A stretch of DNA of 63,879 bases, the filler included, from Reticulomyxa filosa (taxonomy: Eukaryota > Protista > Foraminifera), in the NCBI GenBank assembly GCA_000512085.1. It is 8 parts of 8 records of this genome, joined end to end, with 100 filler letters (N's around TTAATTAATTAA, not from the genome) between each part and the next. Parts side by side here need not be neighbours in the genome. Positions count along the whole stretch, not along the records: positions 1 to 26,372 come from ASPP01007960.1; 7 more parts are not named here. One strand, given 5' to 3'. This document shows, in pieces, positions 3,001-23,170 of the stretch (positions within the stretch are counted from its first letter, which is position 1; each line of letters opens with the position of its first letter). The notes beneath the pieces were generated by a model. That model saw only the letters and a list, made by a program, of their open reading frames with translations, did no database searches and was not told where the DNA came from. A program made the position numbers and the translations under genes.

Positions 3001-6000
3001 CGCCCTGATCAGCAAGAGTTGATGAAAAAACAAATCTTGTATTCCACAGATATGGCCCCTGCCATTCAAAACAATGCCAAGCAATTGCAACGAGGCTTGC
3101 AACGACGCAAGTCAATTGACGATATTGTGGCGTTGGGCATTATCCACGACAATAGCCAAGCACCTGCCATTCAGTCTGCAGCCGACTCATTGGAAAAAGA
3201 AATCACGCGCCAACAGCTCAGCAAATCGATCAAGCAACGTCCAGATAAACTGTATTTGGAAAACAATCGCGTGCTTGTCAACGAGGAGGTCAATAAACAC
3301 GAAAAAAAATATGTCCGCGAAAAGTTGCAACAGCAATTAGGACGCGAACGTCGTCCGACCATGATGGACCTGGAACTGCGAGGGGTTGTCCCCGAAGGCT
3401 ATTTCTCCAGTGCCGAACGCGCAATTACCTTGCAACATCGAAACAGACAATCGGTCATCGATGACTTGAAATTACGTTTGGAGCAAAGGCCCGATTATTC
3501 CAGAATGCTTGCATCTGGACTTTTGCAAAAAGCTCTGGTATTTATTGTATAATCGTTGTGTATCTTTTTCTTTTTTTTTTAAAAAAAAAAAAAAAAAAAA
3601 GGGGGACATTGAATTTTTTTTATTTAAATAGGAACACCATGAGGCCAAACAACAACTGGAAAAATTCGCGAGTGAACTGGAATCCCCTGAAGCAAGAGCG
3701 AATGCGAAGGCAGCGAAATCAGCTTTGGAAGAGAAGTTGGACAGAGAGAGAAGACCAAGCTATGTCGACTTGCAGAAAAAAAATATACTGAAAAAATCAT
3801 TCAATCCAAATGTAGACGCAATGGCAAATGCATCGGCAAAGGCTGAATTGGAAAGACACGCCTTGGAACATAACTTGAAGTTTCAATTAGCATCGCGAAG
3901 AGATCCAGAAGACATGGTCGACTCTGGATATTTATACTATCCGGTCAATGACGAGCGAGCGCTTTCGCCTGGATTACACGGCGTTGCCCATGAATTGCAA
4001 GAGAATTTGAAAGAAAGACCACATGAGGAGTACTTGATTCAAAAAGGAATTATACACAAAGACGAGTCCCCTGACGATGAAAACCACCCCCGACAGGGCT
4101 ATCCCGATAATGCGACAGAAGAAGTCGAGGAAGAGGAGGAGGAACGCAACCAACACGCACAGGGACGACAAGTGACAACGACTCAGAAATCCTCCAATCG
4201 CTTCGCTTATCAAACAAAACCACAAAGATCACAAGACATGCCACAATTGATCCACCAAGATGTACATGAGCCGCATTTGGAAGTTGATGTGTTGGTACCG
4301 GAACCGGAATTGAGCGATGTTGCCATCAAGTCTTCTCCGCTGGCGTTCATGAATGTGCTTGATTCTCTCCAGGAGCTCAATGAAGCTAAAATTGATATTG
4401 CCAATAAGTACATAACCCAAATGAAAGACAAGGCAACAGTTTTGTAAAACAAATTGTATCGGCTTTTATTAGTACCTTTGGCTTTTGACATCACAATAAA
4501 AATAATGCAAATGTACATCCAAGTCAATTTGACCAGATAACAAATAAACTTTTTTTTTTTTTTCTCTTAGAAACTTTTTGAAACCAAGTCGTTGTTCCAA
4601 AAAATCGAGAAATATGGATTGGACCATTTGGATGTGGAATTTAAATCCTGTGGAGATGTGGACGCGGACTTGGAAGCACTGAAAAACGAACTGATCCAAT
4701 TGCAAACTGACTTGTACAAAATGGATGACGAATATCGGCCTGTGCATTCCAAGTTACGGCAAATCAACACAATAGGAAACGATTTGGAAAAGTACCAAGA
4801 CAACTACCAGTCGACCATGGCGCAGTTGAGACGTGTGCATACCAGGATCAATCAAGTGTTGCTGGAACACCAAACTCAACGTGACAGCGCCATGACGGCA
4901 TTGCAAGCAACGGAATTGCAACAAGCAGTAATGAAATCAAAAATTAGTGACAAAATCGCAGAGACGTTAGTGAACATTGATCGGTTGGAACAACAATTGA
5001 GAGAAGCAAAAGAAGAGCGAATTGCGGCCCAATCTTATGCCACCTCCGTGACTGGCTTGTACCGAAGCTATTTTGGCACGGCACAACAAGAGCATCAATT
5101 CGAACAGGAGTGCAAATCTCCAAAGGAATTGGAACTCGAAGACGAATTGAACATGTCCAAAAACTTTTTGACTGGGTTGAACGAATTTCTGAAAGGATTG
5201 AAAAAATTGAGAAAAGAACAAAGAAACAAAGTTGCCCATTTGGAACAAGTCATCGAACAGTTCCACAAACAAAGGGCTGCTGTCGCCGAAAAAATCGGAA
5301 CTTTAGAAAGTGAAGCTATCGAAAAGTTGCGCACTATTCGTCATCAATTCATTGCACCGTTGCAAGAGCAATTGATTTTACAAGATAGACCACAGAATCA
5401 ATTTCTTCTTCAGTTACTATCATCTTTAATATATACATATACATATATGCATGTATATATTACATAATATATAAGAGGATGTTTTCATTTGCTCTTTTAT
5501 AAGTGTTTTTCTTTTGTCTTGTACAGAGAGAGCAATGACAACGAAACTAAAACATATGGTGGTCCTGCGTTATCATTGGAAGATATCCTGAAAAAACGAG
5601 TCAACCGAATGAATCAAGTGTACAAAAAATTACGCGACTTAGAAAGCAGGGCGATGACAACTGGAAGTCGTGAGTATTTGCGTGGGTTGACAGAAATCAC
5701 TGAGTTACAAGTCATTATGAGAAACCAGTATTTGAAATACTTTTTCACTACCTTTGTTACCAAGGCCAATCAAATGTTCCATGACTTGCAACTAGCATCA
5801 ATTGCAATTACTGAAAAAACTTCCAGTTGGGAATTATATGTCTTAAAAAAAAAAAAAAGAAAGGACTCGATTTGAGTTTTAGACCAAAAAAAGTTGAACG
5901 AATTGTGTTGCACAGGTGCCAATGATCCAAGTGTCACCAATCTGTCCGGGGTCAAAACGTTGGTTCGAGTGTTAGAACGCAACAAACGATCCGTCCATCT

Positions 6001-15812: not shown

Positions 15813-18800
15813 TCAAATCAACTTTTGAATGGTGAGTTTTAGCGTCGGGTAGCCTATAGAACATCAGAATATGTTTTGTGTTGTTTTATTTTTGAAAGAG
15901 AAAGAGCATAAATTTGAAGAAACTTTGGTGATCAGTGCAAACGACAAATACGGACGGTGCAGTAAGATTGTCAACCATGGTCTCATACTCTTGCTTAATA
16001 CCGGTGGCGTGGGGCTTGTCAGGGGGTCTAACATAGTCCGACTTGCCAAGAGCACTTTCTCCACAGATAACTCGACAGTACAGTAACTCGGCACGACGGG
16101 TGATAGGATCGAATTGCACGTACCCATTACGGATAACATAGCTGCAGTCTTTGGCAAAGTAAACCCCGCTTCCGTATGCGTGGTTTGTACTGAACTCTCT
16201 TAGAAAGCCCTGGAGATTATTGTTGCACATTATACGATATTGTTTGCAAACAGATTAAAGTTACAATAAGAAAAGGACAGTGATTATATGTCATACTTTG
16301 TGGACAATCTTTTCCACGGTGTCACAGGTCGCGCCTTATTGGAAAGATATGTAATGTTATCCACACACACAAACAAATGAACAAAGTGACAAAACAAAAA
16401 TAGAAAGAGATGAATATATACCGTGCCACAACATTTGAACATTGTCAGTATTACGGGGGAATCTTTTAGTTGTCAGCCAATTGTCTTCAATTTATTTTAT
16501 TATTATTTGAATTATTATTTATGACACAATAACAACTGCATTATTTTATTTGCATAAAAGAAAAAAAAAAGTAACGATAAAGTGTGTGGTGATGTTTCCA
16601 TATTTCATCATTTTGAACGAAGCAAATCTCAATAATTTTATAATCATGTCTCAGGGTATTGTTAAACTCAATGAAAGCTTTGCGAGCTTCGGCATGTCTT
16701 TGAGCGCTGGCTTTCAAAAAAATAACATCGTTTTTGTTGCCAGGTTCCCACCAATCAGGATACAAGTTCTGATCTTGTGCTTTGGAATTCAAACACAAAC
16801 CAACACAAACATTTGTAAATAGATACGTATGATCGTATTACAAACACAGAAATGTGGCCCTCACTTGAAAGGCATGAGAGATGTACAAAATTGTTTTTTG
16901 TTTCTGTTTGTCTCGGCAAAACTTTTGACGGATTGAACTCGTTGAACACGTCTTTTTTTGTTGGTACGTATATTCAATTGGACTGCCTCAGTCGGTGATT
17001 TTTTTGTCACTTGATAGGTAAATTTGGAGAAGGTGAATACAATCTGTATTAGTTTTATTTTATTCGTTCAAAATACAAACAAACATTATTTTCAATCTAT
17101 TTGATGCAAACAAACATTTTCTCCAATGTTGGCTGCTTCTAATTTTTGCGACAGTTCCTTGTCATAAGTTATGTAATCACCGACGTCATCCTGCCATTTC
17201 TGTCCAATTTCCCCCCCCAAAAAAAACAGAATGTATTGAAAAGTGAAAGCAAATCACAAGGAAGAACTTGATGAAAATATACATGTATATATATATATAT
17301 ACCCAGTGCACTTCATAAAGTTGATTTTGGAATAATTGGACACGTTTCTTGTACTGTTCTAATTCTTTAATTTTCGATTGTTCTTCCAAATCCCGTTTGG
17401 TTTCTTCTTCGTGTTTTTTCTCTGTGTTTGGTGTGTGCACAGACCAAGTTGGCTTGCTGAATTGATGTTCTGCCAAGCAACAGTCACAATTTACAAATAA
17501 AAGAACATAACTGAGACACTCAAACATTTTTTTCGGGGAGTTGTAATCGATGGAGACATTCGGCGCAAATTTACGCAAAGCCTTTTCTAATTCACTTCGA
17601 AACTAGGACAATGAAAAAGCAACACATAATTTGCGCAGCATTGATAGCGAAAAAGAACTAAACTTCGTCAAGAGAAAATTCAAAGGTAAAATGTTCTTTT
17701 GAGATATCGTAGGTGTGTATAATAAAATCGATTTTGGGATCCAAAGGAAAGTGCTGCGATATCCACGCGTGAATATCGTCGTTTGTACGGAGATTGTTTG
17801 GGAGATGAGTAACGGTAAGGAATGCGGCATTATTCACATGAGTATCTTGACAATTGGACGCGGTACATCCCAACGCAGAGTTGAATTTGGTGCAAATGGC
17901 TTTGGGTGGGAGTTGGAACTGCATGCGCTCTTCCTTTAGACTTTGCAGACGAGCCAAGACAATTGCACTGCTCACTTTTTCTTTGAACTGCGTGTCGTTA
18001 CTCGAAACAATGGCCTCCAATTCCTTCTCATTCTTCTCCAATAGCACTTTTGTAATCTGCTCCACCGAATTGGGATACAAGCTATTTACTCTTTCATATA
18101 ACTTCGAAATTAAATCACCCTTTGATGGGGGACTCGACTGTTCATTCTGTTTGTTATCTTTTTCGTCCAGATTCGACGGCCCTTTTTGTGTTTCCTCTCC
18201 TTCCCGTTCACACAATACATTGCACAATAGTACGTATACAGTCTTTTTTTTTTATATCTGTTTATTTGTTTGCGGTTTGGATTTCTTGTTCCTTACCTTT
18301 GGGAGTCATCTGTTCAGGACTAGGAGCAGCACGTGATGGATTGCTTGCACTCATTTTTCCTTTTTTTTTTTTGGATGCATGTAAATAGGTTTTATTTCGC
18401 ATAGAATAAAAGTGGATCTTTAGATAGAGAGCTTTTCTCGTGTTATTTAACTTAAACACTCGCATTCGGCTTGTAGCGTTGTATGCAGCGAGTACTCCAC
18501 GCCGACCTCGTTTTTCCATAGTTCGTTTTGGAAATATGCTTTTATTTGATCTCTTGTCTATCAACAAACGATAAAAAAAAAAAAGGTCCTCCAATCTCCT
18601 CTTATTCCCTTTTGCTTAACTTGTGAATTCGAAAATTCGATGGTAAAACACGTCGGAAATCGCGGAATGGCATGGATCACATAGAATTCTTTGCCAAGTT
18701 GTTGATCAATCCAACATTCAATGTGACGATGACTTTCGATGTAACGGGGGACATTGTACACCGTCAAGCATATCGCCGGTTTTATATGTCTGCGAGTGCA

Positions 18801-19605
18801 TTGTTTCTTGCATCCGCTTATAGAGTTAAAATATTTGCAAAATGTAGATTGTCGAGTATACTCTCCACGTCTATATTCTTCTTCTTCTTCTTCTTCTTCT
18901 TCTTCTTCTCTTTCTCCTCTTCGTCCTCTTGATTCTTTTTTCTTGTCCTTGTTCACTAATTGTTTGCAGCGTATATCACAATATGTATGTATTTGTCTTA
19001 TTCTTCAACACGTATACCACACATGCACAACACACTCCACTCCTTCCCTCTTTTCCATTTTTTAACAAACTGCTTGGTCTGACGTATGCTTCGTATGGTG
19101 TTTCGTGACCAAATCCGAACTTATTCCATCCACCGATTGGCGCGTGTGAATAAGGACAACCGAGACCCAAAGTACATACGCTCGATCTTTCCAACTGTGG
19201 ACATTTTTTCTTTTTTTGTGCTTCATCTGCTATGTGCGCAAATTTACATGCACTGCCTTTTCGACAGCCCCTTACGTTATAATCGCGACACTTGCGTACG
19301 GATCCAGGTCCAGATCCGAATCCGCCGCCTCTTTGCTTTGATGCTTTGCCTCTTTGATTCCTCCCAGCTCTTTTTCTCTTTTTTTGAAATTTCTGATCAC
19401 TAAACACTTCTCGTTCTTTTGTTTCCTCACCTTCTTTACTTATCTGTGGTTGATCAATTGCATCCATTGTGTCATTGTCTTCTGGTTCTGGAGAAGGAGT
19501 CGGGGTTGGTGTATGAAAGTTTGTTTGCACTTTACGTGCCATTCGTTCGCTTGTTTTTTTAACATGATCCGAATGTGCTTTTTCTAAATCGAATATGTAC
19601 GACAT
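15813..19605 (-). CDS. ZAP/PARP12-like ADP-ribosyltransferase: CCCH zinc fingers, two RRM-like modules, MLLE (PABC) domain, WWE, PARP catalytic domain
   Basis: Phase-consistent splicing across about 12 introns. CCCH motifs CRDYNVRGCRKGSACKFAH, CPQLERSSVCTLGLGCPYSH, CKYFNSISGCKKQCTRRH, CTKFNSALGCTASNCQDTH. WWE: KWQDDVGDYITYDKELSQKLE...QLNIRTNKKRRVQR. PARP: MLWHG...YGSGVYFA...CRVICG...VDNLTAPSVFVV...QSYP. Confidence 0.85.
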
Positions 19606-21541: not shown

Positions 21542-23170
21542 TTAAGTTTTCAAACACGATTGATAAGGAGGAACTTTTTTAAAAAAAGCAGCGAGATCAG
21601 TGGGATCAATGTACCATACAGAAGGATCTCTTGCGTGTTGAACAAAGCGAACGGGAACAACCCAGTTGTTTAACTCATGTTGAATGCGTTGAGACTGTCG
21701 AGATTGATTTGCGTTGGCGCTCTTGTCTATTCTCGAGTGAGTTCCTTTTCCACAAATGATGGAGATGATGCCATTATGGAAATACTTGGACAAAGCATGC
21801 CTTTGAAAAGTGACCAAGTAGCGTAAAATGAAAGTGGTGGAAATGTGAGACATCAAATGGAAATCCAACACAGCACCTGAGATGAAAGGATGAGCCACCC
21901 ATATTGGAAGAGAGTGCCGACACTGCGGAGTGGACCACAAGAACTCGAATTTGGGAACAGCCTTGAGCCAATCATCTTTATGTAGTAGGATGAAGGCTTG
22001 AAGGAGCAGGTCCATTTCCTTTAGAGGGACAGTACGAAAGTTGGGTAATTCAATAGGGAATAGTGGAGAAAGTTCGTTCAAGAATATGTGCAAAAAGGAT
22101 TGGAAATGTTGTTGTCTCTCCTTCTCATTCTCTGCGAGTTCCATCATTCGAATATATCCAATGCATTGAAATACAATAATCTTTTGATCATTGATATTTA
22201 TTCTGCCGTATTTGGCCAACTTGCACACCCGTTTGTAATAAAAGTCAAACATCTCCTGCACTTTGTTGGCTTGCAACAGTGAAGCCATTACAATAGTCGT
22301 CCACACTTCGAGCGAGTTGTATACGTCTGTAGATGTTTGCAATTGCTTTTCCATTGTGTTCCAGATATTCATCATTTTATCCAATTCTCCTGCTTTGCCG
22401 TACACATTCAACATTGCTCCCAACAATTCCGGCGAGTCGGCTCGTATGAGCCGTTGGTCTCGATTTTGTATAAGCTTTTCTGCTGTTTCCACTTGACATG
22501 CATTTGCACACACTGTCAACAATAACGAATAGCACACGCCGTCCGGAGCAATGCCAAACTTGTCTTGCATCATGTTAAAGTACTTTAGTGCTTTTTCCAC
22601 GTTTCCTCTTTCTTTGTGTGCCTTGATCATCGCTGTAAACAATATCACATTCGGCTTCTCTCGCATTGTCTCGCACTCGTTTTCAAACCACTTTTCAAAA
22701 TATTGATCTGCCAAGCTGTGTCTATCACACATCGCCCAAAAGTTCAATACGCTTGCACAAAATATTACATTCAGCTGTACTTTATACTCCTCCGCAAGTT
22801 CCACCACTTCGAGTACGTCTCTCCAACTATTATGCCTCTCGAACAGTAATTTCACTGCCGCCGAATATAGTATTACATTCCAATTAGACGGATCTTTCAG
22901 AAAGTTAAATATACTGTCTTTTTCCATATATCGCATGTCGTCGACTTTTTCTTTCATATGTTGTGGGATTTCTGCTTTCGTTAATGCTCCATTTACACCA
23001 CGCATTCTTTTTCGAGAGGCTGCGTCATCCTTTATTTGCTTCACAAAGATATCTTTTTGGTTTTGCACAAACTTCAGAGGGACATGATATAATCGTCTTA
23101 TCACATTTTTACATAATTTGCTTTCGAGATTTCTTTGCAAAAAAATTTTCTTGACAACGTGGTGCTGCAT
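21542..23170 (-). CDS. Pentatricopeptide-repeat protein with C-terminal Smr domain (PPR-Smr), probably mitochondrial
   Basis: Intronless 542-aa ORF. PPR repeats (PNVILFTAMIKAH...KALKYFNMM; PDGVCYSLLLTVCA; LLGAMLNVYGKAGELDKMMNIWNTM). Smr motifs VLDFHLMS and IICGKGTHS. Basic N-terminus (VIRRLYH). Confidence 0.85.
   Translation of the reverse strand: MQHHVVKKIFLQRNLESKLCKNVIRRLYHVPLKFVQNQKDIFVKQIKDDAASRKRMRGVNGALTKAEIPQHMKEKVDDMRYMEKDSIFNFLKDPSNWNVILYSAAVKLLFERHNSWRDVLEVVELAEEYKVQLNVIFCASVLNFWAMCDRHSLADQYFEKWFENECETMREKPNVILFTAMIKAHKERGNVEKALKYFNMMQDKFGIAPDGVCYSLLLTVCANACQVETAEKLIQNRDQRLIRADSPELLGAMLNVYGKAGELDKMMNIWNTMEKQLQTSTDVYNSLEVWTTIVMASLLQANKVQEMFDFYYKRVCKLAKYGRININDQKIIVFQCIGYIRMMELAENEKERQQHFQSFLHIFLNELSPLFPIELPNFRTVPLKEMDLLLQAFILLHKDDWLKAVPKFEFLWSTPQCRHSLPIWVAHPFISGAVLDFHLMSHISTTFILRYLVTFQRHALSKYFHNGIISIICGKGTHSRIDKSANANQSRQSQRIQHELNNWVVPVRFVQHARDPSVWYIDPTDLAAFFKKVPPYQSCLKT

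What the first reader, a model, noticed from the sequence alone, without database searches (positions are those of the whole stretch)
15813..19605. One gene encodes a ZAP/PARP12-like RNA-sensing ADP-ribosyltransferase with extra MLLE and duplicated CCCH-RRM modules
Seen: about six separate-looking ORFs plus small exons missed by the ORF track (e.g. 17116-17199, 16923-17043) splice with consistent phases into CCCH-CCCH-[CCCH+RRM-like]-MLLE-[CCCH+RRM-like]-coiled coil-WWE-PARP. Known: CCCH+WWE+PARP is the architecture of vertebrate antiviral PARP12/PARP13(ZAP)/PARP7. Inference: this protist protein may be an independently assembled RNA-surveillance or stress-granule effector. I know of no PARP that also carries MLLE.
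Basis: partly seen in the sequence, partly recalled or inferred. Interest (0 to 1): 0.85.

Follow-up and report, generated by a model that had tools for sequence, protein, structure and literature searches.

The report
Foraminiferan PARP with CCCH and MLLE
One 14-exon gene of the foraminifer Reticulomyxa filosa joins four CCCH zinc fingers, a PABP-type MLLE domain, a WWE domain and a mono-ADP-ribosyltransferase (PARP) domain, a domain combination not found elsewhere here; its function has not been tested.

Summary
On the minus strand, 19605 to 15813, fourteen exons join through thirteen GT-AG introns of 42-143 nt (mean 86 nt) into a stop-free CDS of about 889 aa. The assembly is Reticulomyxa filosa (101.9 Mb, 50,809 contigs).

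Domains:
- Supported: four CCCH fingers, an MLLE domain (sequence plus predicted fold), WWE, and a PARP catalytic domain with an H-Y-V triad, nearest to PARP14/15/12/10.
- Not settled: the 'RRM-like' halves are only a beta-alpha-beta-beta unit completed by the next exon. The coiled coil was not tested.

No RNA run was listed for the window. The single-gene reading rests on other evidence:
- The same exon order recurs at paralogous loci; five contigs place the CCCH module upstream of WWE.
- There is no in-frame ATG between residues 561 and 772.
- A 1582-nt intron-free homologous contig carries the MLLE-like region, a CCCH finger, the coiled coil, WWE and PARP, and matches seven of the window's splice junctions.

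The gene is one member of a lineage-expanded family, not a one-off. The fingers are not PARP12-type and the PARP domain does not group with the PARP12-like representative, so the resemblance to ZAP/PARP12 looks convergent. An RNA-surveillance role is inference only. This is a new variant of a known kind.

The parts
19071..19605 (-). Exon E1. Start ATG at 19605, a basic region with one RGG, CCCH finger 1 (19234-19290) and CCCH finger 2 (19144-19203). The donor is GTTTGT after 19071; an alternative donor GTGGAG lies after 19041, in the same phase.
   Evidence: zf-CCCH 26.9 bits; patterns; phases. Paralog C26869 also starts M-S-Y. C10646 carries the E1-like and E2-like parts in one open exon.
18621..18955 (-). 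Exon E2: a Glu-rich stretch, CCCH finger 3 (18786-18839), then a beta-alpha-beta-beta half-domain. Donor GTTAAG.
   Evidence: Module profile 120 bits; alignments A2-A4; 51% identity to C10646.
18452..18557 (-). Exon E2b: the 35-aa tail of module 1 (inferred helix and strand), ending in ECL. It is followed by a conserved phase-1 donor A|GTTAAA.
   Evidence: Conserved in C26869 (43% identity) and C10646 (50%). Six tail exons share the same acceptor and phase-1 donor pattern.
18297..18359 (-). Exon E2c: a 63-nt linker exon with donor GTAAGG. It is optional, because skipping it keeps the frame.
   Evidence: Phases. No conserved counterpart was found in the paralogs.
17664..18199 (-). Exon E3: linker, MLLE domain (17961-18107), CCCH finger 4 (17838-17894) and the second beta-alpha-beta-beta half-domain. 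Donor GTTTAG.
   Evidence: MLLE 26.2-28 bits; fold; 34% identity to C26869; 36% identity over 122 aa to L028.
17512..17602 (-). Exon D1: the 30-aa tail of module 2, homologous to E2b. Phase-1 donor A|GTTATG.
   Evidence: 59% identity to C4939; 66% identity to L028; donor pattern.
17303..17469 (-). Exon D2: a charged, probably coiled-coil segment. It ends with the first Trp of the WWE motif. Donor GTATAT.
   Evidence: A 42-nt intron separates it from D1. The ...SW|EWEDD match in P0002 and ...ISW| in C4939 fix the donor. The coiled coil itself was not tested.
17116..17199 (-). Exon W1: first half of the WWE domain.
   Evidence: WWE 16 bits alone; 19.7-22.2 bits across the intron; conserved in five paralogs.
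16923..17043 (-). Exon W2: second half of the WWE domain.
   Evidence: The junction is continuous in P0002.
16576..16779 (-). Exon P1: N-terminal part of the PARP domain (YPDWW ...).
   Evidence: 41% identity to C4939. The junction to P2 is continuous in C14009 and P0002.
16422..16484 (-). Exon P2: carries the triad His (LWHG).
   Evidence: H192 and G193 are nearly invariant in alignment A5.
16297..16334 (-). Exon P3: a 38-nt mini-exon. Donor GTATGA.
   Evidence: 82% identity to C4939. Continuous in P0002 and C14009.
15924..16209 (-). Exon P4: PARP core with the triad Tyr (GVYFA) and Val at the third triad position (PSVFVV).
   Evidence: PARP 23.1 bits; PARP14 1e-10 with alignment; the paralogs have Ile at this position.
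15813..15853 (-). Exon P5: the last 13 residues (YPTLKLTI...) and the TGA stop at 15815-15813.
   Evidence: The junction HQ|SYP is continuous in C14009 and P0002.

Best explanation
The minus strand from 19605 to 15813 holds one protein-coding gene of Reticulomyxa filosa, with 14 exons and a product of about 889 aa. [quoted passage not shown]

Shown here: the exon structure, the domain identities except the RRM-like fold and the coiled coil, membership in a lineage-expanded paralogous family, and a homologue that carries both halves on one intron-free molecule.

Inferred: the protein binds RNA through its fingers. It docks PAM2-motif partners of the poly(A)-binding-protein network through MLLE and reads ADP-ribose through WWE. 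It mono-ADP-ribosylates itself or nearby mRNP proteins, because it lacks the catalytic Glu needed for chain elongation. That would make it an RNA-linked mono-ADP-ribosyltransferase that works like PARP12, PARP7 or PARP14 but was assembled separately.
For: - Gene model: thirteen canonical introns, consistent phases, no stop, and an exon/intron GC contrast. Intron size fits the species average.
- Colinear paralogs: C10646 has modules, fingers, an E2-like exon, E2b, D2, W1, W2 and P1-P4 in the same order with intron-sized gaps. C7887 has module, WWE and PARP. C13299 and C6541 have the module upstream of WWE.
- Tail exons: all six end in the same phase-1 donor, so the frame continues.
- No in-frame Met lies between residue 561 (D1) and residue 772 (P2), so WWE-PARP cannot start on its own.
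- L028, a 1582-nt Logan contig, has no introns. It carries an MLLE-like region, a CCCH finger, the D1 tail, the coiled coil, WWE and PARP. Its product P0002 matches seven window junctions from D2|W1 to P4|P5.
- Domains.
- Triad: His and Tyr are present and Val aligns with Leu of PARP14.
Against: - No RNA run was listed for this genome stretch, so no transcript of the window itself was seen.
- In L028 the two halves lie in different frames (0 and 2) at an A7 run exactly at the D1|D2 junction. L028 also lacks about 40 aa of the alpha/beta half-domain.
- The MLLE, WWE and single-exon PARP scores in the window sit at or just below Pfam cut-offs.
- RNA binding, PAM2 binding, ADP-ribose binding and catalysis are all untested.
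- The only human PARP with Val at the third triad position is ZAP, which is inactive (my own knowledge, not checked here). ZAP also lacks the triad His, which this protein keeps.
Confidence: 0.75

Rival explanations
1. Two adjacent same-strand genes: an upstream CCCH/MLLE RNA-binding protein gene and a separate downstream coiled-coil-WWE-PARP gene, split after exon E2b or after D1.
For: - No transcript evidence exists for the window.
- WWE-PARP-only loci exist in the genome, for example C436, which encodes the annotated protein RFI_00403 (P0006).
- In L028 the halves are in different frames, and a gene caller produced a separate 319-aa protein.
- Read without splicing, E2b runs into a TAA two codons past ECL, and exon E2c contains an ATG.
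Against: - Only 42 nt separate D1 from D2, and only 92 nt and 97 nt flank E2c, against a median intergenic distance of 426 bp.
- No in-frame ATG lies between residues 561 and 772.
- The ATG used in L028 arises from the codons GAA TGT; the window has GAG TGT there.
- D1 is the homologue of E2b and completes the module begun in E3.
- The same order recurs on five contigs.
- A split at E2c would still leave MLLE, CCCH, WWE and PARP in one gene.
Confidence: 0.1
2. A decaying or non-functional copy of an expanded family, or a catalytically dead scaffold like ZAP, rather than an active enzyme.
For: - The family is large, and some copies look damaged. The C26869 module changes frame, L028 has a frame change and a deletion, and C7887 lacks the GVYFA Tyr motif.
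- The window has Val where its paralogs have Ile.
Against: - The window copy is intact over 14 exons and 13 canonical splice sites.
- The triad His and Tyr and the flanking motifs are conserved.
- Val, Ile and Leu are all aliphatic, and Ile and Leu occupy this position in the active mono-ARTs PARP10, PARP12 and PARP14 (my own knowledge, not checked here).
Confidence: 0.12

Closest known systems
Vertebrate PARP12 / PARP13 (ZAP) / PARP7
   Same: N-terminal CCCH fingers, then WWE, then a C-terminal PARP domain without the catalytic Glu. PDB matches for exon P4: PARP12 at 3e-9 and ZAP at 1e-7.
   Different: - The fingers do not match the PARP12-type tandem model PF25261.
- There is one WWE, not two.
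- It has extra [CCCH + alpha/beta] modules, an MLLE and a helical linker.
- Its PARP domain does not group with the PARP12-like representative.
- CCCH PARPs are reported to arise within animals (PMC4245714).
PARP14 / PARP15 / PARP10 (clade 3 mono-ARTs)
   Same: These are the best catalytic-domain matches: PARP14 at 1e-10 for exon P4 and 1e-16 for the homologue P0002. PARP14 and PARP10 also combine RNA-binding-type domains with WWE and PARP.
   Different: The window gene has no macrodomain, KH or UIM. PARP14-type RRM models are not matched. The CCCH fingers and MLLE are absent from those proteins.
MLLE/PABC domains of PABP, UBR5/EDD and Ustilago Rrm4
   Same: The fold and the xITxxLLE signature are shared. 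Top structural matches are Leishmania PABP1 (Z 8.7), EDD (Z 8.6) and Rrm4 MLLE2 (Z 8.3). Foldseek probability is 1.0 at 22-30% identity.
   Different: The sequence is divergent, scoring 26-28 bits in the window and 41.5 bits in paralog C26869. The domain sits inside a PARP protein. PAM2 binding is untested.
Other R. filosa CCCH-module / WWE / PARP loci (C10646, C7887, C13299, C6541; C26869 plus C4939)
   Same: They share the module, exon order, intron positions and PARP subfamily, at 50-60% identity in exon P4.
   Different: C10646 and C7887 gave no match in the MLLE scan of the genome. Only C26869, whose contig ends inside the gene, shares the MLLE insertion.

Membership tests
PARP catalytic domain (PF00644), clade 3 mono-ART type | Sequence match to the catalytic domain | tested here: met
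   Exon P4 alone scores 23.1 bits against a cut-off of 26.7. PDB matches: PARP14/15 at 1e-10, PARP12 at 3e-9. The spliced homologue P0002 scores 57.4 bits. The domain is split over five exons, so the window could not be scored whole.
PARP catalytic domain (PF00644), clade 3 mono-ART type | H-Y-[I/L/V] triad: His and Tyr kept, catalytic Glu replaced | tested here: met
   LWHG lies in exon P2 and GVYFA in P4. Val in PSVFVV aligns with Leu of PARP14 PSLFV.
PARP catalytic domain (PF00644), clade 3 mono-ART type | NAD+-dependent ADP-ribosyl transfer | not testable with these tools
   Needs an enzyme assay.
PARP12 / ZAP / PARP7 subfamily | PARP12-type N-terminal CCCH tandem (PF25261) | tested here: not met
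   Exon E1 hits only generic zf-CCCH models. The control P0021 scores 126.9 bits on PF25261.
PARP12 / ZAP / PARP7 subfamily | PARP domain groups with PARP12/13/7 | tested here: not met
   The PDB ranks PARP14 at or above PARP12. In the tree the foram group is separated, at 97% SH-aLRT, from the set holding P0021 and the macro-PARPs. Limits: quick search, unrooted, one PARP12-like row, and the homologue P0002 standing in for the window.
PARP12 / ZAP / PARP7 subfamily | WWE directly upstream of PARP | tested here: met
   WWE lies at 17305-16939 and PARP starts at 16779.
MLLE / PABC (PF00658) | Sequence match and five-helix fold | tested here: met
   Scores of 26.2 and 28.0 bits against a cut-off of 27; paralog at 41.5 bits. 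Model pLDDT is 86-96. All top structural matches are MLLE domains.
MLLE / PABC (PF00658) | Binds PAM2 peptides | not testable with these tools
   No PAM2-like motif was found in cis. Partners are unknown.
WWE (PF02825) | Sequence match over the whole domain | tested here: met
   19.7 bits, or 22.2 with neighbours, against a cut-off of 21.1 when read across the intron. The homologue P0002 scores 29.7 bits. This is borderline in the window itself.
RRM | Pfam RRM match or a beta-alpha-beta-beta-alpha-beta fold with clear RRM neighbours | tested here: inconclusive
   No Pfam hit. The model of the exon-encoded part (pLDDT 81.7) is beta-alpha-beta-beta. The best match is Z 4.2, to the LINE-1 ORF1p RRM; other weak rows are RRMs or ferredoxin-like folds, and Foldseek finds nothing significant. 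The last helix and strand lie in the next exon and could not be joined by reference.
zf-CCCH (PF00642) | C-x8-C-x5-C-x3-H spacing and a profile match | tested here: met
   Finger 1 scores 26.9 bits against a cut-off of 20.5. Four patterns were found, with middle spacings x5, x5, x3 and x4.

The most novel reading that the evidence does not exclude
Foraminifera evolved their own ZAP/PARP12-like arm. This would be an expanded, fast-diversifying family of RNA-binding mono-ADP-ribosyltransferases. Some members, such as this one, also carry a PABP-type MLLE, so they can sit on the poly(A)/PAM2 network and mark or silence foreign or aberrant mRNAs. That would be convergent with vertebrate antiviral PARPs.
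Probability: 0.2. Interest if true: 0.75.

Novelty: new variant of a known kind. Interest (0 to 1): 0.55.

Why it matters
CCCH-WWE-PARP proteins (ZAP, PARP12, PARP7) are treated as an animal innovation linked to antiviral defence and stress granules. A separately assembled version in a foraminifer would show that coupling RNA recognition to ADP-ribosylation arose more than once.

This version adds a PABP-type MLLE domain, a combination not described in the surveys read here. It belongs to a family of many copies, which offers a natural set of domain variants for studying how mono-ARTs are targeted to mRNPs.

The locus also shows that R. filosa genes with many short exons can be recovered by using paralogs as guides.

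Tried and rejected
- RNA evidence: the look-up of sequencing runs listed no run, so read laying could not be used.
- The search for homologous proteins found nothing with exon E3 or with the L028 N-terminal product. This is uninformative, given that tool's word and length limits.
- ESM Atlas gave no usable hit for exon E2.
- Overlap between the end of C26869 and the start of C4939: none was found, so joining them remains a guess.
- RRM fold: searches with a model of the module alone were inconclusive.
- A first reading of the P3 donor suggested a 1-nt phase clash. It was my misreading: the donor is AAA|GTATGA and the phases fit.
- The donors GTGGAG (E1) and GTGCAC (D2) were replaced by GTTTGT and GTATAT after comparison with P0002 and C4939.
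- The joined spliced protein was not sent to any search, family or fold tool. The exons were joined only inside scripts, to count phases, stops, Met positions and short motifs.
- SRR31189384 appears in no paper of the library, so its organism and library type are unknown.
Full report
**Source.** The window's assembly has 101,867,045 bases in 50,809 contigs. That matches the published Reticulomyxa filosa draft: 101.9 Mb, 50,809 scaffolds, average intron 87 bp, median intergenic distance 426 bp (PMC13746701). Database proteins identical to paralogous contigs carry R. filosa names. One example is RFI_00403, on a 20,476-nt contig that corresponds to C436.

**Gene model.** All coding signal lies on the minus strand. 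I placed exon boundaries at GT and AG sites that keep the frames open, then adjusted them against paralogs.
- The result is 14 exons from ATG 19605 to TGA 15813, with 13 GT-AG introns of 42-143 nt (mean 86 nt). There is no internal stop, and the product is 889 aa, or 896 aa with two alternative donors.
- Exon GC is 41.7% and intron GC 29.9%.
- Open points: the E1 donor (19071 or 19041, same phase), the 63-nt exon 18359-18297 (in frame whether kept or skipped), and the E3 acceptor.

**Domains, searched exon by exon.**
- *CCCH:* E1 gives zf-CCCH at 26.9 bits, above the cut-off. Four CCCH patterns are present.
- *MLLE:* E3 gives 26.2 bits and 28.0 bits in the genome scan, against a cut-off of 27. 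An AlphaFold2 model of E3 has pLDDT 86-96 over this part. Foldseek's 12 best matches are all PABC/MLLE domains with probability 1.0. An unbiased VIA-align scan of 48,161 chains puts three MLLE domains on top at Z 8.3-8.7, about 2 Z units above unrelated rows.
- *WWE:* it spans the last codon of D2 plus W1 and W2. It scores 19.7 bits, or 22.2 with neighbours, when read across the intron.
- *PARP:* the domain spans P1-P5. Exon P4 alone scores 23.1 bits. In the PDB it matches PARP14/15 at 1e-10, PARP12 at 3e-9, ZAP at 1e-7 and PARP10 at 5e-7.
- *Triad:* His (LWHG, exon P2), Tyr (GVYFA) and Val (PSVFVV, aligned with Leu of PARP14). The paralogs have Ile at the third position. A mono-ADP-ribosyltransferase is therefore expected; this is inferred from established PARP biochemistry.

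**The 'RRM-like' parts.** Each CCCH finger 3 and 4 is fused to a unit that a separate model (pLDDT 81.7) predicts as beta-alpha-beta-beta. The following short 'tail' exon (E2b or D1) would add a helix and a strand, which is my inference. No Pfam RRM model matches. Structure searches give only weak rows: the best is Z 4.2 to the LINE-1 ORF1p RRM, with several other RRMs and ferredoxin-like folds. RRM-like is therefore plausible but not shown. The coiled coil in D2 was not tested.

**One gene or several?** No RNA run was listed, so I used comparative evidence.
1. *Paralogs repeat the order.* C10646 carries two modules, three fingers, an E2-like exon (51% identity), E2b (50%), D2, W1, W2 and P1-P4, colinear with intron-sized gaps and without an MLLE. 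C7887 carries module, WWE and PARP. C13299 and C6541 carry the module upstream of WWE.
2. *Paralogs close individual junctions.* E1-like and E2-like parts share one open exon in C10646. P1|P2, P2|P3 and P4|P5 are uninterrupted in C14009.
3. *Tail exons are internal exons.* All six examined start after an AG acceptor and end in the same phase-1 donor, A|GTT..., right after a conserved ...ECL.
4. *No independent start.* The model has no Met between residue 561 (D1) and residue 772 (P2). D1 and D2 are only 42 nt apart.
5. *An outside homologue.*
   - A profile of P4 exons searched against 1.84 billion representatives found P0002.
   - P0002 is encoded on L028, a 1582-nt Logan contig of run SRR31189384. 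L028 has no introns, and its best DNA match in the genome is the window gene, at 71% identity.
   - P0002 reads straight through seven of the window's junctions, from D2|W1 to P4|P5. It scores PARP 57.4 bits and WWE 29.7 bits.
   - Upstream on the same contig lies an MLLE-like region plus a CCCH finger, 36% identical to E3 over 122 aa (E 3e-23). The D1 tail follows at 66% identity.
   - Both halves therefore lie on one intron-free molecule in a relative or in an unassembled paralog.
   - Two caveats apply. The halves are in frames 0 and 2, switching at an A7 run exactly at the D1|D2 junction. About 40 aa of the alpha/beta unit are also missing.

**A second MLLE copy.** C26869 has E1-like, E2-like and E2b exons and an MLLE-CCCH exon (MLLE 41.5 bits), and then the contig ends. 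C4939 begins with D1, D2, W1 and P1-P4 and is the closest PARP paralog, at 59-60% identity. They may be two halves of one gene, but no overlap was found.

**Comparison with known families.** Perina et al. 2014 (PMC4245714) place CCCH PARPs (PARP7/12/13) within animals. For Rhizaria they list only clade 3 PARPs with ZnF-RBZ, H_lectin or transmembrane domains.
- Among the 150 nearest PARP representatives, the partner domains were WWE, macro, PARP14-type RRM/KH, ankyrin, CSD and RanBP fingers. One protein, P0021, is PARP12-like.
- None of them matched the MLLE queries.
- A literature search for PARP + MLLE + WWE gave one unrelated paper.
- The window's fingers do not hit PF25261.
- In a quick PARP-domain tree the foram group, represented by P0002, is separated at 97% SH-aLRT from the set holding P0021 and the macro-PARPs. 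The tree is unrooted, has a single PARP12-like row, and uses no joined window sequence.
- The protein therefore works like a PARP12/ZAP-type protein in layout, but it fails the membership tests for that subfamily.

**Mechanism (inferred).** The fingers and the basic N-terminus bind RNA. MLLE docks PAM2-motif partners, WWE reads ADP-ribose, and the H-Y-V domain mono-ADP-ribosylates itself or neighbouring mRNP proteins. The family is large in this assembly: at least 27 matches to the P4 exon, 17 matches to the CCCH module, 40 WWE matches and 33 MLLE matches. That size is compatible with a conflict-driven role, but nothing here tests function.

**Verdict.** This is a new domain-architecture variant of a known enzyme kind, of moderate to good interest.

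Noticed in passing
L028:560-600: In the intron-free homologue, the MLLE/CCCH half (frame 0) and the WWE-PARP half (frame 2) meet at CTT CAA AAA AAC ATC. A_AAA_AAC has the form of a -1 slippery heptamer in the right register, and it lies exactly at the position of the window's D1|D2 splice junction. This may be a homopolymer or assembly error, a splice variant, or frameshifting. The window itself is in frame.
   Followed up: partly
L028:480-500: The homologue lacks about 40 aa (helix 1, strands 2 and 3) of the alpha/beta unit that follows the CCCH finger, and goes straight on to the D1-like tail, in frame. This could be exon skipping or a degenerate module.
   Followed up: partly
L025:3900-3991 and L018:1-150: Contig C26869 ends inside an intron just after an MLLE-CCCH module exon. 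Contig C4939 starts just before the matching D1-like tail exon. They are probably two halves of one sister gene, split by an assembly break, but no overlap was found.
   Followed up: partly
L025:2730-2810: The E2-like module of C26869 changes reading frame in mid-domain, near a run of T. This could be a sequencing error or a damaged copy.
   Followed up: no
G000 genome-wide: The R. filosa assembly holds many WWE (40), MLLE (33) and clade 3 PARP-exon (27) matches. Apart from the window's own contig, only C24253 appears in more than one of the Pfam-family scans (WWE and PARP).
   Followed up: partly
L027:2300-2810 and 4100-4720; proteins P0003, P0007: Some PARP paralogs (C14009, C5287) are flanked by repeated Cys-rich units of the form C-x2-C ... 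C-x2-C ... C-x2-C, which look like ZZ-type zinc fingers. This is another domain combination in the family and was not checked with Pfam.
   Followed up: no
window:2212-4444 (+) and 21545-23170 (-): Neighbouring genes: ORFs with RPEL repeats (29.9 and 23.1 bits) and a 542-aa PPR-repeat protein (PPR_2, 53.8 bits). Both seem unrelated to the PARP gene.
   Followed up: partly
window:25001-26000: GC falls to 20.7%, with a strong GC skew (0.31), near the end of the contig piece.
   Followed up: no
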